DNA from: Nageia nagi
Lineage: Eukaryota; Plantae; Pinophyta
Assembly: GCA_050084985.1 (NCBI GenBank)
Contig: JBITNC010000001.1
Coordinates: 14,880,001-14,944,000, forward strand
Reading direction: 5' to 3'
DNA: 64,000 nt
Position 1 is the first letter of the stretch. Every line of letters begins with the position of its first letter. Below the pieces are notes generated by a model. It was not told where the DNA came from, ran no database searches, and saw nothing but the letters and a program-made list of their open reading frames with translations. Shown one piece after another: positions 38,440 to 62,675 of this stretch. Made by a program: the position numbers and the translations under genes.

Positions 38440-38925
38440 TTGAAATAGGCCCGGCTTAAGACACTATCTCCAAATAATAAATAGGCACCGACAACCAAAC
38501 CTCATTACTTACCCAATAAATGCAATTAAGTATCCCAATTAAAAACTAGTTAATAATAGATACGAAATCTGGTGAAATTAAATTTACCCTTAGCAAAACA
38601 CGTTGCCGATTTAGCCGGGCATTCGAGGTAGAAAATTTGGTATTTTACTTTTTTCCAAGCACGCACTGCAAGCTTGCAAACTTCAGTTTTCTTGCATTGC
38701 ATGCAGAAAGAAAACTCCCACCACACTTGCAGAGACACGTTGCATTGCATTGCAGCAGCCCACATACTCGCGCGCACACCTCTCTCTCTCTCTATACCTC
38801 TTCAATATACACATTCTACGTAGCTCCAAACAGACAACTCTCTCTATATTATATTGCAGACCGAACAGGAGATGTAGGAGGGCAAACAGAAGCCTTTGGA
38901 GCAGCAAATTATATGCATTGTGAAG
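38440..38925 (+). promoter_or_regulatory. Probable promoter/5' UTR of the helicase gene
   Basis: CpGs are retained, unlike the flanking TEs; GGCCC site-II-like motif; two CACGTTG boxes (~38599, ~38735); CT-repeat at ~38780; TATA-like tatattata at ~38845. Confidence 0.55.
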
Positions 38926-39867
38926 ATGGCTGAAATGGGTTTCAGGGCCATGAAAGTTGTGGACGAAGGTGTGGAGGAGTTTATGAGTGAGAAGCACAAT
39001 GTTCCTTCGAATAAGATAGGAGAGAAGTATCCAAGCGTGGAGGATTACCTGGGCACTCAGTTTAGATTGTTGAAAGAGGATTTAATTACGCCATACAAGC
39101 AAACGGTGAAGGAGTTCAGGAAGAAGAAGGTGTCGGGGGAGTTTAACAGAAAACAGCTCAGCGATGTGCAGATATACAACAATGTGAGATTGGTTGGCAT
39201 GCGGGCTGATAATGCAGGTATGGAGTATGTTTTGAGGTTTGGTACTGTAGAGGGTCGTAGTAAATATGTAGATTGGGTGAATGAGAAGCTGCTGATGTTT
39301 AATTCCCTGCTCTGCGTTTCGTGCGATGGGTATGAGAGTTTTTTCTGGGCCGTGGTTTCGACCAGGAGGCCCAAGGAGTTGAGTGTCGGGAGGAGGTTTG
39401 GAGCGAGGGGGATTGAGAAGTGGGAAGTTGGGTTTGAGCATGGGGTGGTGTATACGATGTTTGAGTCCACAAGTGCTTTTTTTGAGGCTTACCAACATGT
39501 GTTGAGGGTGTTGCAGAGGAGAGAAATGGAGATGTTGGAGTTTATGAGGCATTTTGTGTTTCTGGAGCCGGAGGTTGGAATCCCAAAGTATTTGGAAAAT
39601 GTGGGTGGTAGGTCTGATGCTTGTCCTAGTGGTGGTGGTGGAGGAGGAGGCGGAGGTTGTGGTGGTTGGGGGAATGATGGGTCTCATTCGTCTCACGGTC
39701 CTGGTGGTGGTGATGGTTGGAGTGATGAAGAAAACAATTGTCCACTTGGTGACAGCAATGTTGGTTGGAGTTGTGCTTTAGGGAATGAAGGGAGCAATTG
39801 GTCACATGCTGATGGTGGTGGTGGTGGTTGGTCTGGTTTTTATTGGAGAAGTGAATTCCCACATTGA
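38926..39867 (+). CDS. ZNFX1: ZNFX1-like SF1 helicase, N-terminal part plus the first half of a Gly/Trp-rich insert
   Basis: KYPSVEDYLGTQFRLLKEDL, DVQIYNNV, VDW..EKLLMFNSLLCVS.D, Y.MFEST.AFFEAYQHVL..LQ and P.YL match the ZNFX1/Hrr1 pre-helicase region. First ATG is at 38926. A -1 frame change or an intron is needed to join the next ORF. Confidence 0.85.
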   Translation: MAEMGFRAMKVVDEGVEEFMSEKHNVPSNKIGEKYPSVEDYLGTQFRLLKEDLITPYKQTVKEFRKKKVSGEFNRKQLSDVQIYNNVRLVGMRADNAGMEYVLRFGTVEGRSKYVDWVNEKLLMFNSLLCVSCDGYESFFWAVVSTRRPKELSVGRRFGARGIEKWEVGFEHGVVYTMFESTSAFFEAYQHVLRVLQRREMEMLEFMRHFVFLEPEVGIPKYLENVGGRSDACPSGGGGGGGGGCGGWGNDGSHSSHGPGGGDGWSDEENNCPLGDSNVGWSCALGNEGSNWSHADGGGGGWSGFYWRSEFPH

Positions 39868-42302
39868 ACACAATTTCCCCTGAAGAAGGAATAGAAGGGA
39901 AGAGTTCAGCAGCAGGGGACAATGTAAATAATGATGATCCGGGCACAAAACAAATGGAAATAGATGCTAGTGGCCAATCGGGTATTTGGGCAGTAGCTGT
40001 TAGCAACGAGAGGGCGGGCAATGCTTCAGAAGACGAATTGGAGTCAAAATCATGTTGGGGTGGACAGAGTGATAGTTGTGCCCAAGGCAATGAAAGGGAT
40101 AGTTGTAGCTGGGGACCGAAATTGGAGGTTGGAACTGGCTGGGGCGAACAAACCCATAATTCAGTGCAAGGTGATGATCAATGGGAAGGGTGCAATATTG
40201 GAAAAGAGAATGCTTTCGATGATACACCAGAAGATGAACTTATTGGGTCTATTGGGCTTGGGAGTCGGGGTGTTGATTATAGCCAGGAGGCAGCTATCAG
40301 GCATGGATTGTCGAAGAAGCTGGCCATCATTCAGGGCCCTGCAGGGACTGGGAAGACATTTGTGGGTCTTCTTATCACAGAATGTTTGCTTGCAGCTCGA
40401 AAAGTGCAAGGTCCTATAGTTGTGGTATGCTACACCAATAGAGCTTTGGATCAATTTTTGGAAGGGGTTTATAAGTATGAAACTAGCCTTGTGCGTCTAG
40501 GAACAGGAAGCAAGAGCCAAGTCTTGCAACAGTGCAGTGTAGAACAGTTTCAGAAGAAACTAAAAATTCGACTCCCACGGTATCTACGACAAGAGAAAGG
40601 CAGACTCAAGTTCAATCAGGAGAAACTGGCTGGTGAAGTAAATTTTTATGCGGAGTGTATGAATGCGGAACGGGTGACTGGAGAAGCTCTTAGAAAGAGT
40701 GCAAAAGAAGAGCATTTTAATAGCTTGTACTTCTGTAGTGAATGCAGACAGGATGAGATTTATCAATCATGGTTGGGTGGGAATGACAAGATGCACGTTA
40801 CCTCTACTTGTCCTTTTTCAGTAACACAGTCTAAAATCGAAAGCACTATTGAAAAACAATCTTTGGTCTTTAGAGGGATTGGAGATGAGGGCGATTCTAC
40901 AAGCATTGGGTTAATCCTTGAATATGGTGATATAACTGATGTTTGGATTTTGGATGTCCAGTCCAGGCAGAGATTAGACCAGCATTGGTTAGAGAAAATT
41001 AGATTGCATGGACAGAAACAGTTTGGGAATTTGACTTCTCAATACGAAGATATATGCAACAAATTGGCAGAGATGAAAAACAAAAGTCAACGGTACATGC
41101 TTAGCTTTACAAAAGTCTTGGGCATGACAACAACTGTTGCAGCAAGGTATTTTGACATTTTGTCTGCGTTAAAACCACAAGTTATGATAGTAGAGGAAGC
41201 AGCAGAGGTTTTGGAGGGCCAACTTTTAGCATGCCTAAATCCGTATATTCAACATCTTATCCTCATAGGAGATCACATGCAGCTCCGGCCTTTTGTTGCT
41301 TCCCCACAGCTTGCAAGCAATTACAATTTGGATGTTTCCTTGTTTGAAAGGTTGATAAACAATGGTATACAGTACAAAACATTAGAAATGCAAAGGAGAA
41401 TGAGGCCTACAATTGCCTATCTTAGTGCAGGTTTTTATCCTACTGTTAAAGACCACAGATGTGTGAGAACTTTAGACAATGTAACGGGTGTTAAACACAA
41501 TATCTTCTTTTTTGATCATGCAAATGCAGAAAGTTGTGCGGATAATTCAGGCAGCAAATTGAATCTTGGGGAGGCTGATGTAGTGGTTGCTTTCGCAATG
41601 TATTTGTTGAACATATGTGGTTATTCTTCAAAGGATATAACAATCCTGAGCATGTACAGATCCCAAGCTAATGAGATCAATCAACGTTTTATGCAACAGT
41701 TTCCTCGAAAAAGGAAGGATCGCGTTAAATTCCTCAGTGAAGAAGTACCAAGGGTTAGAAGTGTAGATGAGTTCCAAGGGGAAGAAAGTAACATTGTTAT
41801 TCTTTCTTTAGTGAGGAATGTGACTCAAACCTCCGAAAACTTATCCTCAAATCAAATATCACCTATAGAATCTATTGGCTTTTTAGGTGCCGCAAATAGG
41901 ATTTGTGTTGCTCTTACTAGAGCTAAATTGGGGCTATATATGTTTGGGAATTCATCACTTCTTTCTGAGAAAAGTCATATATGGAATGACATCATGGACC
42001 GTCTGATTACTTGTGGATGGATTGGAAGGAGGATGAGACTCTGTTGTCCCAATCACACGGATATAGAATTCCGCATTTGTACATCAGAAGAATTCTCTAG
42101 AATCTACTGTCCAATGAATTGCAAATTTACTCTCAAATGTGGCCATCCATGTTCCCGATTTTGCCATGTGGGAGGTCATCAGATTATATATTGTGAGAAG
42201 ATTTGTGGCAGGAAACTTGAATGTTGTGGACATCTTTGTGGAAGGATCTGCCATTTGGGTTCATGTGTTCCATGTTATGATTGTAGCCTTGAGATGGTCT
42301 GA
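39864..42302 (+). CDS. ZNFX1: ZNFX1-like (NFX1-type zinc finger-containing) UPF1-family RNA helicase core plus two NF-X1 zinc fingers
   Basis: Uninterrupted 812 codons: SQ..A, IQGPAGTGKT, VCYTNRALDQFLE, GMTTT, IVEEAAEV (ZNFX1-type Walker B), LIGDHMQLRP, SLFERL, VDEFQGEE, NRICVALTRAK; C-terminal CPNH, C...LKCGHPC...CH and C...L.CCGHLC...CH. Confidence 0.92.
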   Translation: MNTISPEEGIEGKSSAAGDNVNNDDPGTKQMEIDASGQSGIWAVAVSNERAGNASEDELESKSCWGGQSDSCAQGNERDSCSWGPKLEVGTGWGEQTHNSVQGDDQWEGCNIGKENAFDDTPEDELIGSIGLGSRGVDYSQEAAIRHGLSKKLAIIQGPAGTGKTFVGLLITECLLAARKVQGPIVVVCYTNRALDQFLEGVYKYETSLVRLGTGSKSQVLQQCSVEQFQKKLKIRLPRYLRQEKGRLKFNQEKLAGEVNFYAECMNAERVTGEALRKSAKEEHFNSLYFCSECRQDEIYQSWLGGNDKMHVTSTCPFSVTQSKIESTIEKQSLVFRGIGDEGDSTSIGLILEYGDITDVWILDVQSRQRLDQHWLEKIRLHGQKQFGNLTSQYEDICNKLAEMKNKSQRYMLSFTKVLGMTTTVAARYFDILSALKPQVMIVEEAAEVLEGQLLACLNPYIQHLILIGDHMQLRPFVASPQLASNYNLDVSLFERLINNGIQYKTLEMQRRMRPTIAYLSAGFYPTVKDHRCVRTLDNVTGVKHNIFFFDHANAESCADNSGSKLNLGEADVVVAFAMYLLNICGYSSKDITILSMYRSQANEINQRFMQQFPRKRKDRVKFLSEEVPRVRSVDEFQGEESNIVILSLVRNVTQTSENLSSNQISPIESIGFLGAANRICVALTRAKLGLYMFGNSSLLSEKSHIWNDIMDRLITCGWIGRRMRLCCPNHTDIEFRICTSEEFSRIYCPMNCKFTLKCGHPCSRFCHVGGHQIIYCEKICGRKLECCGHLCGRICHLGSCVPCYDCSLEMV

Positions 42303-45638: not shown

Positions 45639-48600
45639 TGTGACGTCCCCCGTTGATTATTGTAATTAGTTGGATTCCCTCTTTGTATATATTTAATTAT
45701 TTAATTGTGCTTTATTAGTTAGGACTTGGGATAGAAGATATAAAGGTCTGTTGGACCCCATTGTGAGCCTCAACTGGGACGTCTCCCTCTCAAGTGTAGT
45801 TTCGTGTGATTTAATGTACTTGGAGATCCCAAAAAGTGATTGTGGGAATCCCAAGGCTTATTTAGCACTTAGAGCATGGATAGTCATCTATTGGCCCCAA
45901 CTTTGAGATTGGGAGTACTTGTAAATATGCGCCAACCTTGGGGAGACTCCTAGACCCCATGTTGGCCCATGACACCATGCATGCCTCCTAGGTACCCAGA
46001 ATGCCTCTTGACCACGCATGCCCTCTAAGGTCCACATTGAGCTTGAGGACCACGTGAGCATAAGGGAGGCCTAGATACCCACATTTGGCCTAGAATGACC
46101 CTTAGGTGCCATCGTTGGGTTTGAGGGTTGGGTGATGACTTTGAGGTGAGATCTAGATCCAGTGTGAGCTATATTAAGCCTTGGAGCATCATTGCTAGAT
46201 ACACAAACTTGATATTATTACTCATACCGTCCAACGGACACCAATTTTGGCGTAGTGTCAACCACATCCCTAGGTGCAACATCTAGGAGAGTTAACAGGT
46301 TGAGGGATCCTATTCATCTACGGCTAAGGTGTAGCATCTTAGTCCATCCGATGGCATTCCGAGGTCGCATTCCTACCATTTAGTTGGTTCCTAGGATTTA
46401 GAGAGAGCTCCTTCAATGGAGAGGATTCAGATTTTGAGGGGGTGAGGTTGTCCCATTTGTTCCATCTGTCTAGCATTGATCATACTTGTTGTATCCTAGT
46501 TAGTTCCTTGGAGGCCAATGTTGAGCCCTATGGGCCTAGTATTGTATCATTGTTCATTCTGTATCATTAATACAAGTTGTGGGCATTTGGATCTCATATG
46601 CTATTGTGTACTTGTCCATATTTGCAACATTGTGTTGTATATATCCATTAATGCATGTATGAGCCAGACATTCTTAGTTGTATGTTGATTAAGCTTGTAT
46701 TTGGTGCCCTAACCCTAATGTTGGCATATTGAGATGTTTGATGCTTGTAATTGCCCTTCTAGGCTAGACATGGGTATTGGTTTGATTGAATTTGCTTAAT
46801 TGCATTTGAAATTGTGATTGGGATTCTAGAGTGGTATCAGAGCTTGGATTTGACCAACTTGTGAATGAAACCTACAGATCACAACTACTACACCATATCT
46901 AGCATCAGAAGAGAGATGGCTTTAACAAAGAAGAGTGGGAAGACACAACATGAAGAAACCCCCTCTAGAGCCACCCATGATGAGGATGAGTGGCCTTGGA
47001 TGAATGACGTCCTTGATGAGGATAATCTTGGTGAGGAGAGTGAGGTAGGAAGAGACAGATCCACATCAGCCAGGAGGAGGAGCCCTACTTCGACTAGAGA
47101 GTCCACACCAGAAAGAAGGTTTAATGAGCTCATCTCGGCCATCCACAATATGACAGGAGTCATAACCACCATGCAGAAGCAGATGAATGACGTTAACAAA
47201 TTCATCAGAGGTTAAGAAATACCAAAGAGGCATGTGAGCCCCCCATGTCCTATGTCAGATGAAGAAGAGCCACGAGAGGATAGGATGGAGAGAGAGTTGA
47301 GCTTGAGGAGATCTCGTAGTCTGAGGGATAGAAGATCCACCCATCACAGATCCATGGGCTTTCCAAGACTCACATTTTTGAGGTCCCATCCTCATAGAGC
47401 TCCATAGGGAACTAACCCTCTCCAGGGAGATTCCTAGATGAGGACATTGGGAAGATAGGGGAGCAGTCCATAATTCGCAAACCATCCAAGCCCATGTTTG
47501 CCAAGAAGTCTACAAATGAAACAAAGAACCGGATCCCCGACCCTCTGGAGTTGAACCAAATTTTCAGAGAGTACTCCATGCTGGATCCAGGGTTGAGAAA
47601 TATGAACTTCAAGGCTACTTGGAGATTTTGGGGCTGAAAGGAGGTAGCTCTCACGGCACACACTCCCAAAGCAATTCGTGGGGTTATAAGAGGGATCTGC
47701 AGCAGAAAATCAACCAAGATGTAAGTACCCTTATATGACAGCAAGAGGATGATGGATAGGGCTTGGCTACATTAGCTACAAACCTACTTCACCTTGAGTT
47801 CGAACATGGTAGAGGAGGATGCCATTCATTTTGCATCACTGCACTTTGAGGGTGATGCCCTCGAATGGTGGCAGCATGGAGTGATCAACCAAGATTACTC
47901 CCATATCACCTCTTTTGATGAGTGTACCCAGAGATTGGTAAAGAGGTTTGATCAGAAAAGGGAGAATGATTATTTCAGGGAATTGACATCTCTGAAACAA
48001 CAAGGTGCGATAGATGAGTATGTGTTCAAGTTTCAGAAGGTTGCAGTTATGATTTGCAACATTCTTGAGGAGAGATTGACATTTCTTTTCATAGAAAGAT
48101 TGATGGAGCCATTGTAGGGAATGTCAAGGTATCTACACCAAAAACCTTGATGACACCATTAGAGCTGCATATGACTTAGAGCCCACCATGAAATCTCTCA
48201 AAGGAGGGAAAACGTACAAGGGGTAGGCCAGTCAGAAGATGTTTGCAGAAAAAGAGGGGCCTAGTTGGTCCAAACCTTTTCCCTTGCCTAGAACAAGCCA
48301 ATTGGACACAGCCAGCTGGAGAAAGTTGAGAGAAGAGGGTAAGTGCTACTGTAAGAAGACGTGGAAGCTAGGACATTGTTGCCAAGACAAAGGGTAGATG
48401 CATTACATTGAGGTGTTTTCAGATGAGGAGGAGGACGATTCGGATTTGGACCTTGGTATGGACATGTTGTACCAAGAGGCACCTAAGGTAGAAGGCTCAT
48501 TGGGGAGCATGATTGCTTCACTCCATGGGGTGAAGAAGTACCTCACATTGAAGGTAGTGGGGCAAGTAGGTGGTCAGAATGTGATGGTCTTAATTAACCT

Positions 48601-48731
48601 TGGAGCATCTCACAACTTCATTGATGAGGGATTTGCAGAGATGAAGGGCCTCAAGATCAAGGGGTTTAAGGGTTTCATAGTTTCCAATGTCAATGGGAAA
48701 TCTCACTTTTGTGGACCAAATCATGAAGAGA

Positions 48732-51700
48732 TGTGACATCCCCCTTGTAGTTTTAGTGGGACTGGTTTGGTCACCTTGTACTATACTTATTTGATGTATT
48801 TGCATGTGCATGGTTGTGACTTAGGATAGGAGACTTAATGGGTCAAGTGGACCCCATTGTGAGCCCTAAGTGGGACGTCCCCCTCCTAAGTAGTAGATTA
48901 GGTATGTATTGCATTGGAGATCCTAGATTATGGGAATCCCAAGGTATTTTTATACATTAGAGTGATGGACAGCCACCAGCATGCTAGCACCACTCTGGGG
49001 AGGGTCCCATACCGCCACGTTGGCTTAGTAGGACTCCAAGACCCCCACGTTGGCACTTTAAGTGCTAGGGACCCCACATTGGCTTATTAAGTGATCATAA
49101 CCCCCACGATGGTGTTATGAATGATCATGACCCCCACCTTGGCATTTTAAGTGATTGGGTCCCCCAAATACCCAACATTGGATTAGATGGGCTTGGGTTG
49201 ACTCCTAGGTGAGATTCGGACACAAGAAATGTATAAATAGGCATTGGAGCTTCATTATTGGACAACCATTATTGATCATTACTTCTACTATAGTCGTTAG
49301 GACAAAAAGTCTTAGCGGTGCTAAGCATTCCATTCCTAGGCGGAGCGTCTAAAGGGTAGTCAAGCGTTGGGAGCTTGATTATCTACGGCATTGGTGGAGC
49401 AACTTTTCCCATCTAATGGCTTTTTGAGGGTTTACTTCTACCGTTCAATCGGTTAGCTAGAGTTCGAGGAGGGCTCCTTCGATGGAGAGGAGTCAAGGTC
49501 TGAGGGGGTGAATCTATCCTGTGGTTCCACAATTGTCCAACATTGAAGATATCAGATTGTTGTGCCCTAGTTGGCTCCATGGAGGCCAACGACAGACCAT
49601 TGGGCTTGGTATTGTATCACATTCATTGTATATCATTCATATACAGCCAGAGGGCTTCAGATGTCATTATTGTGTTGTATTGTCTCATACTTTTGCATGC
49701 GTTGGATCTCATTGATTGTATGTACTTGTATTTATCATTTGATGGCACTTTAATTTATTAGGGTTTGGATTATACATGTATGAGCCAAACTTGGCATTTT
49801 GAGATTGTATTCATTGATATATGCTTACATATGCTAGATGTTGGCATTCTGTGTATCTGAATGTGTAATCTTGATGTCTTAACCCTAACATTGTATACTT
49901 GAGGATTTGTTGTCTTGTGTATGATGCCCTAGACTTGACGTCAGGGTTTGATGATCCTGTATTGCTAGTTTGAGGCGGAATTTAATTTTTGGATCATCAC
50001 AAGTGGTATTAGAGCTTAGATTTGGCCAGCTTGTGTATGAGACCTAGAATCCACGATGGCATCTGCTAGGAAGAGCGGAAGATCTAAGGAGACAATAGAG
50101 AGAGCCATCTAGGATGAGGAGAGACGGCCATGGATGAATGAACCACCGAAGGAGAGGAATTCCGGTGACGGGAGAGAGGCGTAGGAGGTAGACAGAGGAC
50201 TGCTAGGAGGAGCTCCACTCCGGTTCAGGGATCCACTCCTGAACAGAAGTTTGATGAGCTCATTTGGGCCATTCACAATATGACTAGAGTGATGACTTCT
50301 ATGGAGCAGAAAATGACCAGACATTGAGTAGACATTGTGGATCCAGAGAGGCACCAATCACCACCACGGTATGCCAGAGATGATTGGAGAGCACAATGCC
50401 ATGTCCAAGATGAGAGGGAGCACCCACAACTGGCCAGGGATCAAATGGAGCACCCACAATTGGCTAGGGAGGACAGGGAGCATCCATGTCTGGCCAGAGA
50501 TGACTAGGATACCTCACGTCCAGCTAGGGAGGGCAAAGGAGCCCCACGTTTGGCCAAAGGAGATGGAGATGACTAGATTGAGGAGGATCGATCTGATTGG
50601 GAGCACAGCTTGAGGAGATCCAGGAGCTTGAGGGATAGAGAATCCACACACCATGGATCTTTGGGGTAGCCAGAGGCCACTTTCCTAAGATCTCATTCAC
50701 ATAGGGCACCCTAGGATACAAACCCTCCCTAGGGAGGTACTTGGAGGAGGACATTGGTAGAATGGAGGAGCAACTTGTAATTTCGAAGCCGTCCAATCCC
50801 ATGTTTGCACAAAGACAGGGGAGGCTTCGAAGAGTAAGGTGCCTAGTCTAGTGGAGTTGAACCAAATCTTTAGAGAGCATTCCATGTTGGATCTTGGTAT
50901 GGGGAGGGACGTCATCTTCAACGGCTATCTGGAGCTCTTGGGGTTGAAGGGTAGTAGTGCGCATGGCCCACGACATTCAAGGAGCCAATGGAAGGAGAAG
51001 GACCTGCAGCACAATATCATTAAAATGCAGGTTCCCATGTATGACAGAAAGAAGATGACTGCTAGGGCATGGTTGCATCAGTTGTAGACATACTTCACCC
51101 TAAACCCTAGCATGGAGGATGTGATTCATTTCGCATCATTGCGCTTGGAGGGTGATGCCCTAGAGTGGTGGCAACATGGAGTGATCATCTAGGGGTATTC
51201 ACTCATCACCTCATTCGATGAGTTTGCTAGGAGGTTGGTGAAGAGGTTGACCGGAAGAAGGAGAATGATTACTTCCAAGCTTTGACAATGTTGAGGCAGT
51301 CAAGGGCTATGGACGAGTATGTGACGGAGTTTCAAAGGATAGCCTTCATGATTCATCACATTCTAGAGGAGAGATTGGCTTTCCTCTTCATTGAGGGGTT
51401 GACGGAGCCTCTGAGAGGGATGGTCAAGGTGTCCTCTTCTAGAGCCTTGACGATGCTATTTGGGCAGCCTACAACTTGGAGCCCATTGTGAAATCCCTTA
51501 GGGGAGGATCGGTATCGAAGGGATCGGCTAACCGAAAGTCGTTTGTTGAGGGGCCTAGCAAGGCCAAGACATTTCCTCCATCCAAGACAAGATTAGTTGG
51601 ATGCAGCTACACGAGGAAGTTGAGGGAAGAGGGCAAGTGCTTCTATTGTAAGAAGACTTGGGAGCCTAGGCACCATTGTTTGGGGAAGGGACAGGTGCAC

Positions 51701-54312
51701 TACATTGAGGTGTTCTCGGAGGAGGATTCGAAGGATTCAAACTTGGAGTTGGGAGCTGATGTTGAGGACTTAGGGTCACCACGAGTTGAGGGTACACATG
51801 GGAGCATGATCTCTTCACTCCATCGAGTGAAGAAGTACCTGACTCTAAAGATTGTGGTACAGGCAGGTGGATAGGATGTGATGGTGCTGATAGATCCTGG
51901 AGCATTCCACAACTTCATGGATGCCGGCTTTGCAGAATGAAAGAACTTGAAGATCAAGGCATTTGAGGGGTTTCGAGTTTCCAATGCCAACGAGAACTCA
52001 CCTTGGTCGACCACATTGTTGAGCGGATTGGAGTGAGATTGCAGAGCTGTGTAGTGAGGGAGGATTTCTACATCTACCCCTTGAAGGGGTACCCTCACAT
52101 CATTCTGGGAGTTCAGTGGTTGTTTGACTTAGGGGATATTCATACCAACTATCAGAAGGTCGCTATGAGTTTCGAAAGAGATGGTAAGACACACATACTA
52201 TAGGGTATCAGGGATGATGTCCATAGGTGGACAAAAAGCGTCTAGAGGGATTGAGTGGTGTCAGTAGAAGGAGGCTGAAGGAGAATCCACATTGCATCCT
52301 GAGGAGCCGAGAGGGGCCACATTGGGTCATGGAGGAGCTAGGATCTTGACATTGAGCACATAGGAGCATTTTCACCCCACATTGGGCACACTGGAGGTCT
52401 GCAAGCCCACGTTGGGCATTCAAGTGCCTTACCCAACCATGTTGAGCATCTAGGAGGCATGTCATGTCACATTGAGCTACTAGGAGGATTAGAGCCCCAC
52501 ATTGAGGATTAGGGAGGCCAGGGTTGCTGTTGAGAGGTGTCATGGTGATGGGCACCCCATTTTGAGGTTTGAGGAGACTAGGATTGTTGATTGGAGGTAC
52601 CATGATGGTGGGCACCCATCATTGAGCTTGATGGAGGCTGCATTCCCCTCATGTTGGTTTCAAGAGCTGAGGATGAGGTGGTTTCTTGCCTCACAGTGGC
52701 CATGAGGAGTTTGGGAGTTTTTGAGCAGAGTTTGGGGGAGACACTACTGTCTGAGTGGAGCTTAGGCTTTACTTGTTTTTCACTGACCATTATCTTTCCC
52801 AAGTTTTTGTAGGTACAGTTTAGCCTTGGTGTGCATGCACTTCCATGGCTATGGAGGATCATCATTGAGCATCTATTGAGAAGTGGCAACTATAGCAAAC
52901 CAGAGAGTTTGCCACTTGTATTGAGACAAGAGCATGGAGCTCCAACCGTCCACTCCTCACCACCATCTAGCATGGTGCATATTGAAGTTGCATTCCGCCA
53001 CCATGTGCTTCGGTTGACAATTTCAGAGGATGCATGAGAGACTGGATACTGTGATCTACGATTTCTTGAGGACAAGCAATTCGAGAGGGGAGGCTTTATG
53101 ATGTCCCCCTTGTATGGTCACCTTGTACTATACTTATTTGATGTCTTTGCATGTGCATTGTTGTGACTTAGGATAAGAAACTTAATGGGTCAAGTGGACC
53201 CTACCGTGAGCCCCAAGTGGGACGTCTCCCTCCTAAGTAGTAGATTAGGTATGTATTGCATTGGAGATCCCGAATTGTGGGAATCCCAAGGTATATTTAT
53301 ACATAGAGTAATGGACGGCCACCAGCATGCTAGCACCACACTCCGGAGGGCCCCATACCCCAATGTGGCACTTTAAGTGCTAGGGACCCCACATTGGCTT
53401 ATTAAGTGATCATAACTCCCATGATGGCATTATGAGTGATCATGACCCCCACGTCGGCACTTTAAGTGATTGGGCTCCCCAAATACCCAACGTTGGATTA
53501 GATGGGCTTGGGATGACTCCTAGGTGAGATTCGAACACAAGAAATGTATAAATAGGCATTGGAGCTTCATTACTAGACAACCATTATTGATCATTACTTT
53601 TACTATAGTCCTTCGGACACAAAGTCTTAGCAGTGCTAAGCATTCCATTCCTAGGCGAGCGTCTAGAGGGTAGGTAGGTGTTGGGATCCTGATTATCTAC
53701 GACATTGGTGGAGCACCTTTGCCCATCTTGTGGCATTTCAAGGGTTTACTTCTACCGTTCAGTAGGTTAGCTAGAGTTAGAGGAGGGCTCCTTCAGTGGA
53801 GAGGATACGAGGTTTGAGGGGTTGAATCTATCCCGTGGTTCCATAGTTGTCTAGCACTGAAGATATCAGGTTGTTGTGCCCTAGTTGGTCCTTGGAGGCC
53901 AACAACTGCCCATTGGGCTTGGTATTGTATCACATTCATCTCTATCATTCATACACAACCAGAGGGCTTCGGATCTTATTATTGTGTTGTATTGTCTCAT
54001 ACTTGTGCATGCTTGGATCTCATTGATTGTATGTACTTGTATTTATCATTTGATGGCACTTTAATGTATTAGGGTTTGGATTATACATGTATGAGCCAAA
54101 CATTGGCATTTTGAGATTGTATTCATTGATGTATGCTTGCATATGCTAGACGTTGGCACTTTGGGTATTTGAATGTGTAATCTTGATGTCTCAACCCTAA
54201 CATTGCATGCTTGAGGGTTTGTTGTCTTGTGTATGATTCCCTTGACCTGACATCAGGGTTTGATGATCTTGTATTGCTAGTTTGAGGTGGAATTTAAATT
54301 TTGGATCATCAC
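48732..54312 (+). mobile_element. Non-autonomous gypsy family B nested in the protease of family A copy 1
   Basis: LTRs 48732-50001 and 53097-54312; PBS TGGTATTAGAGC at 50004; PPT GAGAGGGGAGG; imperfect TSD (A)GAGA. The empty site is seen in copy 2 at ~58680. gag and PR only. Confidence 0.92.
52270..52760 (+). repeat. Degenerate 30-bp tandem array replacing pol in family B
   Basis: ccacattg/ccacgttg/ccatgttg cores recur every ~30 bp. Confidence 0.8.
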
Positions 54313-54569
54313 GAGATTTGGGGTGAGGTTGTAGAGTTACACGGTGAAAGGATTTCTATGTCTATCCTTGAAGGGACATCCTCACATCATTCTAGGCATA
54401 CAGTGGCTGTTTGAGTTGGGTGACATTTGCACCAACTATCAGAAGCTCACCATGAGCTTCGATATTGATGGTAAGACCCACACATTGCAGGTAATTCAGG
54501 ATGATTTCCCACAGGTCGCCAACAAAAGATTAGAGATGATTGAGTGGTGTAAGAAAAAGGAGGAAGAAT

Positions 54570-55170
54570 ATGAGTCCACATTAAACATGGAAGAGCCTTG
54601 GTATGAGGCAAGAAGTGATGAGGAGCTCCCATACCTCACGTTGGACATGGAGGAGCTTCTACCCCTCACATGGGACATTAAGGAGGCTTGCTACCTAACG
54701 TTAGGCTTGGAGGGGCTCTTGCACCCATCTTTGGACTTGGGGGAGCTTCTACACCTCACGTGGGAGACTAAGGGGCTTTGGTACCTGATGATGAAGCATG
54801 GAGGGACTCTTGCACCTTACATTGAGCTTTGGAGAGGCCTAGGCACCCAACGATTGGCATGGTGGAGTTCTCGCATTCCATGTTGGACCTGGATAGGCTT
54901 GGGCACCTAATGTTGGGCATGGAAGAGTCATGGCATCCCTCGTTGAGCATGGAGAGGCTACAACGCCCCCCGATGGGCTTGAACGATAGTTTGGTACCCC
55001 GTGTTGGAGATTAGGGAGGATTGGGACTCTACAACGCCCCCTAATGGGTTTGAAGATAGTTTGGCACCCCATGTTGGAGATTAGGGAGGATTGGGACTCC
55101 ACGTTGGTAGCTGGGAGAGTTTGGGATCCAACGTTGAGCTTGGGGGAGGCTTGGCCACAGCCATGGAGCA
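54570..55170 (+). repeat. Degenerate 30-bp (10-codon) tandem array replacing pol in family A copy 1, including a ~70-bp local duplication
   Basis: LTLDMEELLP / LTLGLEGLLH / PSLDLGELLH periodicity; 54960-55030 is duplicated at 55031-55100. Confidence 0.85.
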
Positions 55171-58100
55171 AAGGCTCCACCTGTTTGTACTCATGCTTGA
55201 TTTACTTGATTTTTTGCAGGTACATCTTTCAGGAGGCTTCCATATGCACACAACTACAACTAGATACCCAACATGGATGGATGCATCAACATCTCTGCAT
55301 ACACTCCCATGTTTTCTGAGGATGATGGCACCAAAATGCTTGTAGACATTTTGGCACTTGATGTGGGGTGACAACAGCAACATATCAAAATTTTTGCATG
55401 CAATGTTGAAATATGTGGAGGCAGCTTCAACGTTTCATACAAGACCTTCACCATGGAGGAGACTTATTGATGTTGCATTCCACTCCAGTAGATTGCAATC
55501 AACAAGGCTGAAGGATTCTTGAAGGACAATATGCTGCAACATTCTACCATTGCTTGAGGGCAAGCAATTCAAGAGGGGAGGCTTTGTGATGTCCCCCTTT
55601 GATTAATGTAATTAATTCTGGAATCCAATGGATTTCCTCTTTGTATATGTTTAATTATTTAATTGTGCTTTATTAGTTAGGACTTGGGATAGAAGATATA
55701 AAGGTCCGTTGGACCCCATTGTGAGCTTCAAGTGGGACATCTTCCTCCCAAGTGTAGTTTAGTGTGATTTAATGTGCTTGGAGATCTCGAAAAGTGATTG
55801 TGGGAATCCCAAGGTTTATGTAGCACTTAGAGCATAAATAGTCACCTATTGGCCCCAACGTTAAGATTGGGAGTACTTGTACATATGTGCCAACCTTGGG
55901 TAGACTCCTAGACCCCCATGTTGCCCAATGACACCCATGCATGCCTCCTAGGTACCCATGAATGCCTCCTTGACCCACGCATGCCCTCTAAGGTCCACAT
56001 TAAGCATGAGGACCCATGTAGAGCATAAGGGAGGCCCAGATACCCACATTGGGCCTAGAATGACCCCTAGGTGCCATCGTTGGGGTTTAAGGGGTTGGGT
56101 GATGACTTTGAGGTGAGATCCAGATCCAGATCCAGTGTGAGCTATATTAGGCCTTGGAGCATCATTGTTGGACACGTAGATTTGATATTATTACTCATAC
56201 CATCCAGTGGACACCAGTTTTGGTGCAGCTTCAAGCACATCCCTAGGTGCAACATCTAGGAGGGTTAACAGGCTAAGGGATCCTATTGATCTACGTCTAA
56301 GGTGTAGCATCTTAGTCCATCTGATGGCATTTCGAGGTCGCATTCCTACCATTCAATTGGTTCCTAGGTTTTGGAGAGAGCTTCTTCGATGGAGAGGATT
56401 CAAATTCTGAGGGAGTGAGGTTGTTCCATTAGTGTTCCATCTATCCAACATTGATCATACTCGTTGTGCCCTAGTTGGCTCCTTGGAGGCCAACATTGAG
56501 CCCTATGGGCCTAGTATTGTATCATTGTTCATTCTGTATCATTAATACAAGTCATGGGCATTTGGATCTCATATTCTATTGTGTACTTGTCCATATTTGC
56601 AACATTGTGGTGTGTATGTCCATTAATGCATGTATGAGTCAGATGTTTGCATTTGTATGTTGATTAAGCTTGTATTTGGTACCCTAGCCCTAACATTGGC
56701 ATATTGAGATGTTTGATGCTTGTAATTGCCCTTCTAGGCCAAACGTGGGTATTGGTTTGATTGAATTTACTTAATTGCATTTGAAATTGTGATTGAGAAT
56801 CTACATTGGTATCGGAGCTTGTATCTTGCCAACCTATGAATGAAACTTGCAGTTCACAACTACTACACCATATCTAGCATTAGAAGAGAGATGGCTTTAA
56901 CAAAGAAGAGTGGGAAGACAACATGAAGAAACCCCCTCTAAAGCCGCCCATGATGAGGATCGACAGCCTTGGATGAATGACGTCCTTGATGAGGACAATC
57001 TTGGTGAGGAGAATGATGCAGATCCACATCAGCCAGGAGGAGCCCTGCTTCGACTAGAGAGTCCGCACTAGAAAGAAGGTTTAATGAGCTCATCTTGACC
57101 ATCCACAATATGACAGGATTCATAACCACCATGCAGAAGTAGATGAATGGCGTTAACAAATTCATCGAAGGTCAAGAAATACCAAAGAGGCATGTGAGTC
57201 CCCCACATTTTATGTCAAATGAAGAAGAAGAGGCACGGTAGGATAGGATGGAGAGAGTGCCGAGCTTGAGGAGATCCGCAGTCTAAGGGATAGAGGATCG
57301 AGCCATCACGAAACCAAGGGCCGTCCAAAACCCACGTTTTTGAGGTCTCATTTTCATAGAGCTCCATAGGGAACTAACTCTCTCCTAGGGAGATTCCTAG
57401 ATGAGGACGTTGGGAAGATAGGGGAGCAGACCATAATTCTCAAACCATCCAAGCCCATGTTTGACAAGCAGTCTACAGATGAAGCAAAGAATTGGCTCCC
57501 TGATCCTCTGGAGTTGAAGCAAGTTTTTAGAGTACTCCATGTGGGATCCAAGTTTGAGGAGAAATATGAACTTCAAGGGCTACTTGGAGATTTCGGGGCT
57601 GAAAGGAGGTAGCTCTCACAGCACACGATCCCAAAGCAACTCGTGGGGTGAGAAGAGGGATCTGCAGCAAAAATCAACAAGATGCAAGTACCCTTATATG
57701 ACGGCAAGAGGATGACGGCTAGTGCTGGCTACATCAACTACAAACCTACTTCACCTTGAGTCCGAACATGGTAGAGGAGGATGCCATTCATTTTGCATTA
57801 CTGCACTTTGAGGGTGATGCCCTCAAATGGTGGAAGCATGGAGTGATCAGCTAGGATTACTCTCACATCACCTCTTTCAATGAGTTTGCCCAAAGATTGG
57901 TAAAGAGGTTTGATCGGAAAAAGGAGAATGATTATTTCAAGGAATTGACATCTCTGAAACAACAGGGTGCGATAGATGAGTATGTGTTCAAGTTTCAGAA
58001 GGTTGCAGTTATGATTCACAACATTCCTGAGGAGAGATTGACATTCCTTTTCATAGAAGGATTGATGGAGCCATTGCAGAGAATGGTCAAGGTATCTACA

Positions 58101-58944
58101 CCAAGAACCCTTGATGATGCCATTAGAGCTGCATATGACTTGAGCTCGCCATGAAATCTCTCAAAGGAGGGTAGATGTACAAGGGGTAGGCCATTCGGAA
58201 GACGTTTGCAGAAAAAGAGGGGCCTAGCAAGTCCAGACCTTTTCCCTCACCTCTAACAAGCCAATTGGATGTAGCCACCCAAAGAAAGTTGAGAGAAGAG
58301 GTAAGTGCTTCTGCAAGAAGACATGGGAGCTAGGACATTGTTGTCAAGGCAAAGGGTAGGTGCATTACATTGAGGTGTTTTCAGATGAGGAGGACAATTT
58401 AGATTTGGACCTTGGTATGGACATGCTGGACACGGAGGCACCTAAGGTAGAAGGCTCATTGGGGAGCATGATTGCTTCACTCCATGGGGTGAAGTACCTC
58501 ACACTAAAGGTAGTTGGGCAAGCAGGTGGTCAAGATGTAATGGTCTTAATTGATCTTGGACCATCTCACAACTTCATTGATGAGGGCTTTGCAGAGAAAA
58601 AGGGCCTCAAGACCAAGGGGTTCGAGGGTTTCAAAGTTTCCAACGCCAATGGGAAACTCTTTTTGGTGGAACAAATCGTGGAGAGATTTGGGGTGAGGTT
58701 GCAAAGTTACACGGTGAGAGGATTTCTATATCTATCCTCTGAAGGGACATCCTCACATCATTCTAGGCGTACAACAGTTGTTTGAGTTGGGTGACATTTG
58801 CACCAACTACCAGAAGCTCACCATGAGCTTCGATATTGATGGTAAGACCCACACATTGCAGGGAATTCAAGATGATTGCCCATAGGTTGCCAAAAAAAGA
58901 TTAGAGGTGATTGAGTGGTGTTAGAAAAAGGAGGAGGAAGAAGA

Positions 58945-59465
58945 TGAGTCCACGTTGAACATGGAAGAGCCTTGGTACGAGGCAAGAAGCAATGAGGAGC
59001 TCCCATACCCGTTGGACATGGAGGATTTTCTACCCTTCACATGGGACATTGAGGAGGCTTGCTACATAACGTTGGGCTTGGAGGGGCTCTTGCACCCCAC
59101 TTTGGACTTGGGGGAGCTTATGCACCTCACATGGGAGACTGAAGGGCTTTAGTACCTGATGATGAGCATGGAGGGACTCTTGCACCTTATGTTGAGCTTG
59201 GAAAGGCCTAGGCATCCTACGATTGACATGATGGAGTTCTCGCATTCCATGTTGGACCTGGATAGGCTTGGGCACCTGACGTTGGGCATGGAGGAGTCAT
59301 GGCATCCCTCGTTAAGCATGGAGAGGCTACAACGCCCCTCGATGGGCTTGAAGACAATTTGGTACCCCATGTTGGAGATCAGGGAGGATTGGGACTCCAC
59401 GTTGGCAACTGGGAGAGTTTGGGATCCAATGTTGAGCTTGAGGGAGGCTTGGCCAGAGCCATGGA
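58945..59465 (+). repeat. Degenerate 30-bp tandem array in family A copy 2
   Basis: Same units as 54570-55170 but without the local duplication. Confidence 0.85.
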
Positions 59466-61648: not shown

Positions 61649-62675
61649 CAATGTTATACGGGATGCGTTCCCCTTGTGAAGGTCGTTTCCTGTCTTCGGA
61701 ATCCTCGAAATGGGTAAGCGGCTAAGGGGACATTTCCCTAACCATCCCCTTTTGGGGGACCTGTTGGGGGCCGTCCCCAAGATCTCCAGCCAAAATTGGA
61801 GACATTTTTGGCAGGATTGTCATCTTTGGGGCACTTCCATGACGACTCCAAAGACGACTAGCTGTCCCCGAAGTGGCTGAGGTTCGTACCTAGCTAAAAA
61901 AACAGTCAAAATTTTGCTTTAATTTTGAAAAGTAAGGGAGTAGTAGGCTCCACCAGGTTGTACGATTTGGGTCAGGTTCAGGGGCTCTGCCCTTAAACTC
62001 GTAAGCAACAAGGGGGATGCACATGACAAGGGACCGTCTTACACTGTACCATCATGCACCACTATGCTGAATAACATTGGAGATCTGGATATTGAATTCA
62101 CCTCCTAACAAGTTCTCGCACATGAATCACACCCATAGTTTGATTTGGGCCTTGGCCTTTTGCCATTTTGGTATTGTCATGACTGTCATAGTATTATTAT
62201 GTATTTGTTTATGCCATGAGACCTATGACCTATAACTTATCAATGGTGATGAGATTGTCATGACTGTCATAGTATTATTATGTATTTGTTTATGCCATGA
62301 GACCTATGACTTATGAATTGTGATAAGATTTTAGATTGCATTTGGCATTTCATGTTTTAATTTATTTATATTATTTAAGTTTTTAATTTTACGCTTTAGT
62401 ACGATGAATGAGAATGTCAATCAGTTGTATTTAATAAGTTAATATTTAATAGTTAATTATGATAAAAATTGTTATTTAAATGGCTTAAGTTTTAAATTTT
62501 AGCTTTATATTTTGAATTTTCTGTATCTTTACTATATTATTATATATGTATGTATGTATGCTACTTCCCCTTTTTGTCCCCCCGGCATTTCCTAAAAATG
62601 GGTCTGCCATATCCGTCCCCAAAACTCATCCCCTGTCTCCTGCCGTCCCTGTTTCTGAGACTCCATGTAACCTTG
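61649..62675. mobile_element. hAT-like non-autonomous DNA transposon (MITE)
   Basis: Imperfect TIRs CAATGTTATACGG / CCATGTAACCTTG; many subterminal CCGTCCCC/GGGGAC motifs at both ends; decayed 8-bp TSD AACGTAAG/AAAATGAG (5/8). Confidence 0.7.
62173..62310 (+). repeat. Perfect 57-bp direct repeat inside the MITE
   Basis: 62173-62229 equals 62254-62310. Confidence 0.95.

What the first reader, a model, noticed from the sequence alone, without database searches (positions are those of the whole stretch)
39600..40270. ZNFX1/Hrr1-like helicase carries a GW/WG-rich insertion resembling an Argonaute hook
Seen: between the conserved P.YL motif and the SQ/Walker A motif lies a ~220-aa low-complexity G/S/D/E/N stretch with regularly spaced Trp: GGWG, DGWS, VGWS, SNWS, GGWS, GIWA, SCWGG, CSWG, TGWG, DQWE. 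Seven of these are in GW/WG context. Known: GW/WG repeats bind Argonaute (plant NRPE1, SPT5L, SDE3; animal GW182). ZNFX1 relatives couple Argonaute to RdRP amplification (S. pombe Hrr1 in RDRC, C. elegans ZNFX-1), but I do not recall a hook at this position in them. Inference: a plant small-RNA amplification or TE/antiviral silencing helicase with its own AGO dock, outside the pathways characterised in Arabidopsis.
Basis: partly seen in the sequence, partly recalled or inferred. Interest (0 to 1): 0.85.

Follow-up and report, generated by a model that had tools for sequence, protein, structure and literature searches.

The report
Tryptophan-rich loop in gymnosperm ZNFX1 helicase
A gymnosperm relative of the RNA-silencing helicase ZNFX1/Hrr1 carries a ~190-residue disordered, acidic, tryptophan-studded loop that looks like an Argonaute docking platform and is shared by Ginkgo, Cryptomeria and Taxus but by no other relative examined; whether it binds Argonaute is untested, and this genome's copy has a one-base frame break inside it.

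Summary
It is not one open frame here. One base is missing after 39857, compared with contigs of a close relative, and a TGA follows at 39865.

The gene (38935-42302, no introns) is a true ZNFX1-family SF1 helicase. The insert marks a single clade: window, Ginkgo, Cryptomeria and Taxus. All four have 178-224 extra residues with 4-6% Trp, almost no Phe or Tyr, net charge -26 to -33 and a recurring spacing of about 16 residues between Trp. About 70 other relatives have linkers of 59-135 residues with 0-2 Trp; these include the sister gymnosperm paralogues, ferns, bryophytes, fungi and animals. AlphaFold2 predicts the insert as a disordered loop between two confident domains.

Caveats:
- Within the window alone, the Trp excess is only about 1.5-fold over its G+T-rich base composition (P about 0.09).
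- Single Trp turn over between Cryptomeria and Taxus.
- Ginkgo's repeats fail a plant GW composition score.
- No RNA data were found.

Best reading: a multivalent Argonaute hook, at about 45%. It would be a new variant of a known kind. The scan has two other notes on this same gene.

The parts
38935..42302 (+). Whole single-exon ZNFX1-like helicase gene (about 1120 codons), interrupted by one frame break
   Evidence: ORFs 38896-39867 and 39864-42302. The N-terminus MGFRAMK and the C-terminus match Ginkgo P0001 and Taxus P0280 end to end. The gene keeps 140 of 150 family-conserved residues.
39154..39471 (+). ZNFX1 domain (PF25396)
   Evidence: Pfam E 9.1e-17, residues 87-192 of ORF1, full profile length. 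pLDDT is above 90 in the Taxus orthologue model.
39595..40274 (+). Trp-rich acidic low-complexity insert (candidate Argonaute hook) between PKYL and DYSQ. It holds 11 TGG codons at 39667, 39718, 39766, 39799, 39829, 39844, 39987, 40056, 40110, 40140 and 40182.
   Evidence: Both halves have no stops in frame, while the other frames have 1-16. Both halves fall on the disordered side of the charge-hydropathy boundary. The homologous segment of Taxus has pLDDT below 50.
39857..39867 (+). Frame break: one base is missing after 39857 relative to contigs of a close relative, and an in-frame TGA follows at 39865-39867
   Evidence: frame 1 to frame 0. Read laying, table 4: 'A put in behind 39857' in one contig each of runs X1 and X2, which restores a continuous ORF.
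39629..39666 (+). (GGT)n microsatellite encoding the Gly9 run; a second one lies at 39813-39828
   Evidence: Tandem Repeats Finder.
40275..41954 (+). SF1 helicase core (AAA_11 and AAA_12). Walker A GPAGTGKT at 40335-40358, VEEAAE at 41190, LIGDH at 41262, QRRMRP at 41391, VDEFQGEE at 41763.
   Evidence: Pfam E 2.1e-23 and 4.6e-36; motif coordinates.
42045..42299 (+). Cys/His-rich C-terminal region with two NF-X1-type patterns (CGHPCSRFCH, CCGHLCGRICH)
   Evidence: Pattern match. It aligns to the Zn-finger region of ZNFX1 9q9z (query 348-804). The Pfam zf-NF-X1 model was not reported at E below 0.01.

Best explanation
The gene encodes a compact, intronless gymnosperm paralogue of the ZNFX1/Hrr1/SAD-3/RnhA silencing helicases. 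After duplication from an insert-less sister paralogue, and before Ginkgo and the conifers split, a unit of about 16 residues holding one Trp was tandemly expanded. The expansion lies in the surface linker between the ZNFX1 domain and the first RecA domain.

The result is a disordered, strongly acidic loop of about 180-220 residues with 7-12 Trp as almost its only aromatic residues. I propose that these Trp insert into the Trp-binding pockets of the Argonaute PIWI domain. One helicase molecule on a target RNA could then hold one or several small-RNA-loaded AGOs, or be brought to the target by them, and so promote small-RNA amplification or stable silencing. Arabidopsis SDE3 and SGS3 work this way through GW motifs, and worm ZNFX-1 and fission-yeast Hrr1 do so through AGO association.

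Shown: family membership, position, clade restriction, composition, predicted disorder, and persistence of Trp density across four lineages.

Inferred: AGO binding, its multivalency, and the link to amplification.

The copy in this assembly has a one-base gap that splits the ORF. That is either an assembly error or a very recent lesion.
For: - Family: Pfam ZNFX1 plus AAA_11/12; solved ZNFX1 9q9z at E 5.8e-103.
- Clade: the tree gives (Ginkgo,(window,(Cryptomeria,Taxus))) with SH-aLRT 100, sister to the insert-less gymnosperm clade (100), nested in land-plant ZNFX1.
- Linker: 225-247 residues with 7-12 Trp in these four only, against 59-135 residues with 0-2 Trp and no GW in about 70 other relatives.
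- Trp density: the three orthologues (the window gene is not in that protein set) hold the three highest Trp counts in polar 80-residue windows among 284 family proteins.
- Insert properties in all four: Trp 3.9-6.1% against 0.8-1.2% elsewhere, only 1-3 Phe+Tyr, net charge -26 to -33, and 40-100% of Trp spacings within 13-19 residues against 17% for random placement.
- Sequence turnover: non-Trp identity between deep lineages is only 16-21%. Only Trp, period and polarity persist, which is how the GW domains of NRPE1 and SPT5L are described (PMC2910046; the 17-aa NRPE1 repeats in 10.1101/111831).
- GW composition score: with the matrix of PMC2910046 the window scores 41.8, 24.7, 11.9 and 10.3 half-bits and Cryptomeria up to 28.2. 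The best score of any other protein in the set of 120 first-search hits scored, outside the clade, is 22.2.
- Disorder: the AlphaFold2 model of Taxus P0280 has pLDDT below 50 and no secondary structure for residues 237-413, and above 90 on both sides.
- Precedent: ZNFX-1 co-precipitates with WAGO-4 and needs it to bind target mRNA, and Hrr1 acts with Ago and RdRP (10.1101/220111). The AGO1 Trp pockets, GW motifs in the SGS3 disordered region and an acidic patch drive siRNA amplification, and SDE3 is a bona fide GW interactor (10.1101/2025.10.18.683247).
- Coding status: both halves are open in frame while the other frames are stop-rich. Helicase motifs are intact and 140/150 conserved residues are kept.
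Against: - No binding, expression or splicing data exist; no RNA run was found.
- In the window alone, the Trp excess over local base composition is weak (P about 0.085). Gly next to Trp follows from Gly richness.
- Between Cryptomeria and Taxus, Trp columns are no better kept (9/14, 64%) than other residues (64%).
- Ginkgo's repeats (DCQWGQEP..AELEN) are E/L/Q/C-rich and score below the published GW cut-off. The AELEN block is as conserved as the Trp.
- My re-implementation of the score lets 27 of 51 scored family proteins pass the published cut-off, so passing it means little.
- Periodic Trp could simply be inherited from tandem duplication of a unit around an ancestral linker Trp (column 113).
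- Aromatic residues in disordered regions also drive condensation, and the NRPE1 repeats retain function with WG changed to AG (quoted in 10.1101/111831).
- The window copy is frame-broken.
Confidence: 0.45

Rival explanations
1. The Trp-rich acidic loop is functional but is not an AGO-pocket ligand. The Trp could act as aromatic stickers that drive condensate formation, as in Z-granule or siRNA-body behaviour. Alternatively they could bind another Trp-recognising partner, such as CCR4-NOT/CNOT9-type pockets or receptors for acidic-Trp motifs.
For: - The loop is disordered, acidic and has evenly spaced aromatics.
- Worm ZNFX-1 is a condensate protein (10.1101/220111).
- The SGS3 preprint warns that Trp-dependent co-IP can reflect condensation (10.1101/2025.10.18.683247).
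- Many Trp sit in acidic contexts (DGWE, DTDW, DQWE) rather than pure GW, and Ginkgo's context is not GW-like.
Against: - Sticker-type low-complexity regions usually use Tyr or Phe, whereas here Phe+Tyr number only 1-3 against 7-12 Trp.
- A net charge of about -30 without matching positive residues disfavours self-association.
- The family's known biology centres on AGO.
Confidence: 0.25
2. The insert is a tolerated, essentially neutral expansion of a repeat in a surface linker. Trp is frequent because the founding 16-residue unit held the ancestral linker Trp and because G+T-rich DNA makes TGG common.
For: - Base-composition null: 3.0-3.4% TGG expected and shuffle P = 0.085.
- (GGT)n microsatellites lie inside the insert.
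- An ancestral Trp is conserved in all linkers (column 113).
- Individual Trp show no excess conservation between Cryptomeria and Taxus.
- Ginkgo's units are near-identical copies.
- Close relatives differ in structure upstream of 39824.
Against: - Four lineages whose split reaches back to the Ginkgo-conifer divergence keep 4-6% Trp, though the rest of the insert has diverged to 16-21% identity and to different compositions (G-rich in the window and Cupressales, E/N/A/L-rich in Ginkgo). G+T richness therefore cannot explain Ginkgo.
- The reading frame is kept open over about 200 codons in all four.
- The insert has never been lost in the clade.
- Trp is normally depleted in disordered regions (general knowledge).
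Confidence: 0.15
3. Whatever the insert does in the family, the copy in this genome is a recently inactivated pseudogene. The one-base deletion after 39857 ends translation at 39865, leaving a 310-residue ZNFX1-domain protein with six Trp and no helicase.
For: - The frame shift and TGA are in the assembly.
- Contigs of a related organism have the extra A.
- The site is not a homopolymer, where assembly indels are commonest.
- The window has the longest terminal branch in the clade (0.37).
Against: - The downstream 812-codon frame is fully open with all helicase motifs.
- Only 10 of 150 family-conserved residues differ. Seven of these are shared with orthologues and the other three are conservative.
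- No reads of the same individual could be examined, so an assembly error is equally possible.
Confidence: 0.3
4. The frame break marks a short intron (GT 39836 ... AG 39885, 50 nt), or most of the GW segment is spliced out.
For: A GT-AG pair 50 nt apart would restore the frame (read).
Against: - Related contigs carry one more base inside that span and then read straight through. The same 'intron' would be 51 nt there and would break the frame.
- 50 nt is below the usual plant intron size (general knowledge).
- The orthologous gene models keep the insert as coding sequence, and it is open in all four species.
Confidence: 0.03

Closest known systems
ZNFX1 family: human ZNFX1, C. elegans ZNFX-1, S. 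pombe Hrr1, N. crassa SAD-3, Mucor RnhA
   Same: ZNFX1 domain, UPF1-like SF1 core and NF-X1-type Cys/His fingers. The family repeatedly works with Argonaute and RdRP in small-RNA amplification or inheritance (10.1101/220111; PMC5384783).
   Different: The protein is much shorter (about 1060-1120 aa, two finger patterns) and the gene has no introns. It carries an extra Trp-rich loop of about 140-185 residues between the ZNFX1 domain and Walker A. That loop was absent from about 70 relatives checked. The worm and fission-yeast proteins themselves were not in my set.
Arabidopsis SDE3 (MOV10/Armitage-type SF1 helicase with GW motifs)
   Same: An SF1 RNA helicase that carries GW motifs in a disordered region. 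SDE3 is a bona fide AGO1 pocket interactor and is implicated in RDR6-dependent amplification (10.1101/2025.10.18.683247).
   Different: It belongs to a different helicase family. SDE3 has few GW motifs, near the C-terminus (from memory of Garcia et al. 2012). Here 7-12 Trp sit in an internal loop built from repeats.
NRPE1 CTD, SPT5L and SPT6L AGO-hook platforms; animal GW182/TNRC6; S. pombe Tas3
   Same: Disordered, fast-evolving repeats in which only Trp and a polar composition persist. NRPE1 has ten to twelve 17-residue repeats (10.1101/111831; PMC2910046), close to the period of about 16 residues seen here.
   Different: The carrier here is a helicase, not a polymerase, elongation factor or scaffold. 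The insert is much more acidic and richer in Glu and Cys than the plant GW matrix favours, and Ginkgo's version fails that matrix.
Arabidopsis SGS3 disordered region (GW/WG plus an acidic patch)
   Same: GW Trp combined with negative charge, used to couple AGO1 to RDR6 amplification (10.1101/2025.10.18.683247).
   Different: SGS3 is not a helicase and has far fewer Trp. No homology.

Membership tests
ZNFX1/Hrr1-type SF1 helicases | N-terminal ZNFX1 domain (PF25396) | tested here: met
   E 9.1e-17, full profile coverage
ZNFX1/Hrr1-type SF1 helicases | UPF1-like SF1 core (AAA_11 + AAA_12) with intact motifs | tested here: met
   E 2.1e-23 and 4.6e-36. Walker A, VEEAAE, LIGDH, QRRMRP and VDEFQGEE are present. 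140/150 conserved residues are kept.
ZNFX1/Hrr1-type SF1 helicases | Closer to ZNFX1 than to other SF1 helicases; placed inside the family tree | tested here: met
   PDB 9q9z ZNFX1 at E 5.8e-103 against UPF1 at 2.5e-29. Nested in land-plant ZNFX1 with high SH-aLRT support on a quick tree; the careful search was not finished.
ZNFX1/Hrr1-type SF1 helicases | NF-X1-type zinc fingers C-terminal to the helicase | tested here: inconclusive
   Two C-x-H-x-C-x3-C-H patterns at 42045-42299, which align to the ZNFX1 9q9z C-terminus. The Pfam zf-NF-X1 model was not reported at E below 0.01.
GW/WG Argonaute-hook domains | Several Trp in an intrinsically disordered, polar segment | tested here: met
   11 Trp in 224 residues. 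Both halves lie on the disordered side of the charge-hydropathy plot. The orthologous segment has pLDDT below 50.
GW/WG Argonaute-hook domains | GW-domain amino-acid bias (W, G, N, S up; L, I, M, Y, C, H down), scored as in Karlowski et al. 2010 | tested here: inconclusive
   The window (41.8, 24.7, 11.9, 10.3) and Cryptomeria (up to 28.2) exceed the published 6.99 half-bit cut-off, and Ginkgo does not. My re-implementation lacks the ics filter, and 27 of 51 scored family proteins also pass.
GW/WG Argonaute-hook domains | Among orthologues only Trp and composition persist while the sequence turns over | tested here: met
   Trp is 3.9-6.1% in all four against 16-21% identity of other residues between deep lineages. 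However, single Trp are not better conserved than their neighbours between Cryptomeria and Taxus.
GW/WG Argonaute-hook domains | Trp-dependent binding to the PIWI-domain pockets of an Argonaute | not testable with these tools
Pull-down experiments are needed.

The most novel reading that the evidence does not exclude
Gymnosperms keep ZNFX1/Hrr1-type silencing helicases that flowering plants appear to lack. In one paralogue a repeat expansion next to the RNA-binding core created a multivalent Argonaute dock. A single protein would then join target-RNA binding, AGO recruitment and (by analogy with RDRC and Z granules) RdRP-dependent amplification. That would be a seed-plant small-RNA pathway with no counterpart in Arabidopsis, possibly relevant to TE control in giant gymnosperm genomes.
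Probability: 0.3. Interest if true: 0.75.

Novelty: new variant of a known kind. Interest (0 to 1): 0.6.

Why it matters
ZNFX1-family helicases work with Argonautes in worms and fungi, but how they contact AGO is poorly defined. For plants, the paper searches I ran found nothing on this family in small-RNA silencing.

A clade-specific, Trp-studded disordered loop kept since before the Ginkgo-conifer split offers a concrete physical link that can be tested with W-to-A peptides and AGO pocket mutants.

It also points to silencing machinery in gymnosperms that cannot be learned from Arabidopsis. It would be a second, independent case after SDE3 of an SF1 helicase acquiring an AGO hook.

If the loop proves to be a condensate sticker or a neutral repeat, the finding reduces to an unusual low-complexity insertion.

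Tried and rejected
- **Short-intron reading (GT 39836 to AG 39885, 50 nt).** Rejected. Related contigs carry an extra A after 39857 and read straight through.
- **RNA evidence.** The look-up of sequencing runs found no RNA holder and no run with more than 12% of the words. The four runs laid are low-depth contigs, probably DNA, so expression and splicing remain untested.
- **Published GW cut-off (6.99 half-bits).** In my re-implementation 27 of 51 scored family proteins exceed it, so I use only the ranking against them.
- **Trp enrichment from the window alone.** Not significant against local base composition.
- **Search with the first piece (310 aa).** No hits in the allowed length range.
- **ESM Atlas search with the Taxus insert.** Best score 0.78, uninformative.
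- **Loose-end sequence of the related contigs.** Not found elsewhere in the window.
- **The look-up of encoding contigs was closed.** I therefore could not fetch orthologue DNA for codon-level tests or gene structure.
- **Second structure job not run.** In alignment A2, MAFFT aligned the window's poly-Gly run to the Walker A loop, which would mislead the fold.
- **Joined protein.** No protein read through the break was sent to any search tool; the two pieces were searched apart by reference. In my own scripts they were joined only with an X at the break, for the tree and alignments.
- **Horizontal transfer of the compact intronless gene.** Not favoured. It nests within land-plant ZNFX1, next to a fern clade. 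A retrocopy origin of the common ancestor of the two compact gymnosperm clades is not excluded.


Full report
**What is in the sequence**

Window 38935-42302 (+) holds one long coding region without introns. ORF1 (38896-39867, frame 1) carries a complete Pfam ZNFX1 domain (PF25396, E 9.1e-17). ORF2 (39864-42302, frame 0) carries AAA_11 and AAA_12, the UPF1-like SF1 helicase core (E 2.1e-23 and 4.6e-36). It ends in a Cys/His-rich tail with two NF-X1-type patterns.

The best solved relative is ZNFX1 itself (9q9z_A, E 5.8e-103), far ahead of UPF1 (2.5e-29). Both ends of the protein match the Ginkgo and Taxus proteins.

**The observation**

Between PKYL (39583) and DYSQ (40275) lie 224 residues rich in G, S, E, D and N, with 11 Trp. 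Seven Trp touch a Gly. Trp makes up 4.9% of the insert against 0.9% of the rest of the protein.

The stretch is not a single ORF. Frame 1 stops at TGA 39865-67 and the helicase continues in frame 0.

**The frame break**

No RNA run, and no run holding more than 12% of the sampled words, was found. I laid contigs of four small runs on 38900-42300. In one contig each of runs X1 and X2 (organism A, about 96-99% identical across the gene) there is an extra A behind 39857. With it the frame runs on..GWSGFYWRSE-L-PTLNTISPEEGIEGK...

The window therefore lacks one base relative to a close relative. A 50-nt GT-AG intron (39836-39885) would also restore the frame, but it is inconsistent with those contigs.

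The window copy shows no decay:
- The downstream frame is open for 812 codons.
- All helicase motifs are present.
- Only 10 of 150 family-conserved residues differ. Seven are shared with the orthologues and three are conservative.

The break is thus an assembly error or a very recent lesion, and I cannot tell which. Upstream of 39824 the related contigs no longer match the window at all. The first half of the insert therefore varies in structure even between close relatives.

**Is the Trp excess more than chance?**

From the window alone, only weakly.
- The insert DNA is G+T-rich (G 36%, T 25%) and contains (GGT)n microsatellites.
- Overall base composition predicts 3.0-3.4% TGG, and 8.5% of mononucleotide shuffles reach 11 TGG.
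- Codon-position-specific frequencies predict 1.3%.
- Against a proteome-like 1.3%, P = 2e-4.
- Both halves have no stop in frame, while the other frames have 1-16. The segment is therefore coding.

**Comparative evidence**

Searches with ORF2, with Ginkgo P0001 against 1.84 billion representatives, and with Taxus P0163 found only three other lineages with the same feature:
- Ginkgo Gb_12564 (P0001)
- Cryptomeria LOC131071300 (P0002)
- Taxus chinensis KI387_004582 and KI387_040712 (P0280, P0163)

Their linkers between the FEAY.H.L motif and Walker A measure 225-247 residues with 7-12 Trp. About 70 other relatives have 59-135 residues with 0-2 Trp and essentially no GW. These include the gymnosperm paralogues P0003-P0006, ferns, Marchantia, fungi and animals. 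Among 284 family proteins, these three orthologues have the highest Trp counts in polar 80-residue windows; the window gene itself is not in that protein set.

A quick IQ-TREE run (LG+C20, SH-aLRT; the careful search did not finish) gives (Ginkgo,(window,(Cryptomeria,Taxus))) with support of 100. This clade is sister (100) to an insert-less compact gymnosperm clade. Together they sit next to ferns inside land-plant ZNFX1. The insert therefore arose once, before the Ginkgo-conifer split. The window's organism sits on the conifer side.

No named angiosperm protein is among the 120 best hits. This is suggestive, not exhaustive.

**Properties shared by the four inserts**
- Length: 178-224 residues.
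- Trp: 3.9-6.1%, against 0.8-1.2% elsewhere in each protein.
- Phe+Tyr: only 1-3.
- Net charge: -26 to -33.
- Hydrophobic residues: 11-15%.
- Trp-to-Trp spacings of 13-19 residues make up 40-100% of all spacings, against 17% for random placement. The series are Ginkgo 16,16,16,18,16,18; Cryptomeria and Taxus 19,16,16...; window 17,16...

Between deep lineages the non-Trp residues are only 16-21% identical, and the compositions differ. The window and Cupressales are G-rich. Ginkgo is E/N/A/L/Q-rich, with units like DCQWGQEPAAAELEN.

One Trp column is shared with insert-less relatives. This suggests the array grew by tandem duplication of a unit of about 16 residues around an ancestral linker Trp.

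An AlphaFold2 model of Taxus P0280 (60-sequence alignment, pTM 0.77) has pLDDT above 90 in the ZNFX1 domain and the helicase. Residues 237-413, the insert, have pLDDT below 50 and no secondary structure. Both halves of the window's insert fall on the disordered side of the charge-hydropathy boundary, and the flanking domains fall on the folded side.

**Hook-likeness**

I re-implemented the composition matrix and boundary rule of Karlowski et al. 2010 (PMC2910046).
- The window scores 41.8, 24.7, 11.9 and 10.3 half-bits.
- Cryptomeria scores up to 28.2.
- Ginkgo scores nothing above the published cut-off of 6.99.
- The best score among the other first-search hits scored, outside the clade, is 22.2.

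My version lacks the second (ics) filter, and 27 of 51 scored family proteins pass the cut-off. Only the ranking is meaningful.

The period of about 16 residues recalls the ten to twelve 17-residue Ago-hook repeats of the NRPE1 CTD (10.1101/111831).

**Evidence against**
- Between Cryptomeria and Taxus, Trp columns are conserved 9/14 (64%), the same as other residues (64%). Trp are gained and lost while their number stays at 11-12.
- Ginkgo's AELEN block is as conserved as its Trp.
- Aromatic residues in disordered regions can drive condensation without pocket binding (10.1101/2025.10.18.683247).
- NRPE1 repeats are reported to work with WG changed to AG (quoted in 10.1101/111831).

**Mechanism proposed**

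I propose a multivalent Argonaute hook on a ZNFX1-type helicase (about 45%).

The precedents come from papers.
- ZNFX-1 co-precipitates with WAGO-4 and needs it to find target mRNA.
- Hrr1 acts with Ago and RdRP, and SAD-3 and RnhA act in fungal RNAi (10.1101/220111; PMC5384783).
- AGO1 Trp pockets, GW motifs in the SGS3 disordered region and an acidic patch promote RDR6 amplification.
- SDE3, another SF1 helicase, is a bona fide GW interactor (10.1101/2025.10.18.683247).

Domain architecture, clade restriction, predicted disorder and persistence of Trp are shown here. AGO binding and any role in amplification are inferred.

The rivals are:
- a condensate sticker or another Trp-binding partner (about 25%);
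- a neutral repeat expansion (about 15%);
- independently of these, this genome's copy being a recent pseudogene (about 30%);
- an intron or a spliced-out insert (about 3%).

**Novelty**

My paper searches for ZNFX1 together with Argonaute/GW motifs, or with Arabidopsis and small RNA, returned nothing on a plant ZNFX1 helicase or a GW insert in this family. AGO hooks and hook-bearing SF1 helicases are known, and so is ZNFX1-AGO cooperation. This is therefore a new variant of a known kind.

**Earlier notes of the scan and limits**

The scan holds two other first-reader notes on this same gene: s1-846286 on the frame break and s1-846287 on the compact intronless ZNFX1. My results bear on both. 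The break is a one-base difference from related contigs. The gene nests within land-plant ZNFX1, which argues against horizontal transfer.

In scripts the two pieces were joined only by an X.

Noticed in passing
Proteins P0055, P0110, P0111, P0062, P0064, P0080, P0056, P0105, P0081 (Mucorales 'RNA helicase', residues about 40-95): These Mucorales ZNFX1/Hrr1-type helicases are probably RnhA orthologues. They carry three spaced Trp in a polar N-terminal tail (for example QNW..QQGWGG..VGWGE). This may be an independent Argonaute hook at a different position in the same family.
   Followed up: partly
window 39824 and upstream (39584-39811): Contigs of runs X1 and X2 match the window from 39824 onward but continue upstream with unrelated sequence that occurs nowhere in the window. 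No contig of the four runs covers the first half of the insert. The insert seems to vary in structure even between close relatives.
   Followed up: partly
Proteins P0003, P0004, P0005, P0012 (Cryptomeria, Taxus, one unnamed assembly): There is a second compact gymnosperm ZNFX1 clade (825-836 aa) with a linker of only 59-61 residues. It is sister to the Trp-insert clade. Gymnosperms thus have at least three ZNFX1 lineages: long (P0122, 1676 aa), compact, and compact with insert.
   Followed up: partly
window 39082-39696 (-) and 39626-40090 (-): Antisense ORFs of 204 and 154 aa overlap the gene. Their His- and Thr-rich low-complexity stretches mirror the GGT repeats of the insert; they are by-products rather than genes.
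   Followed up: no
Animal ZNFX1 proteins such as P0230, P0200, P0191, P0185 (within the helicase insertion): A single conserved acidic G-W-[EQ] motif, followed by a basic run, recurs just before the 'VW.L...RW.LY..W' helix in many animal ZNFX1 proteins.
   Followed up: no
window 1-38000 and 46000-62000: Sequence flanking the gene is very AT-rich (27-36% GC over most of 1-38000), while the gene is 41% GC. A 16-kb stretch at 46-62 kb has 42-50% GC but no ORF above 190 aa. I did not examine it.
   Followed up: no
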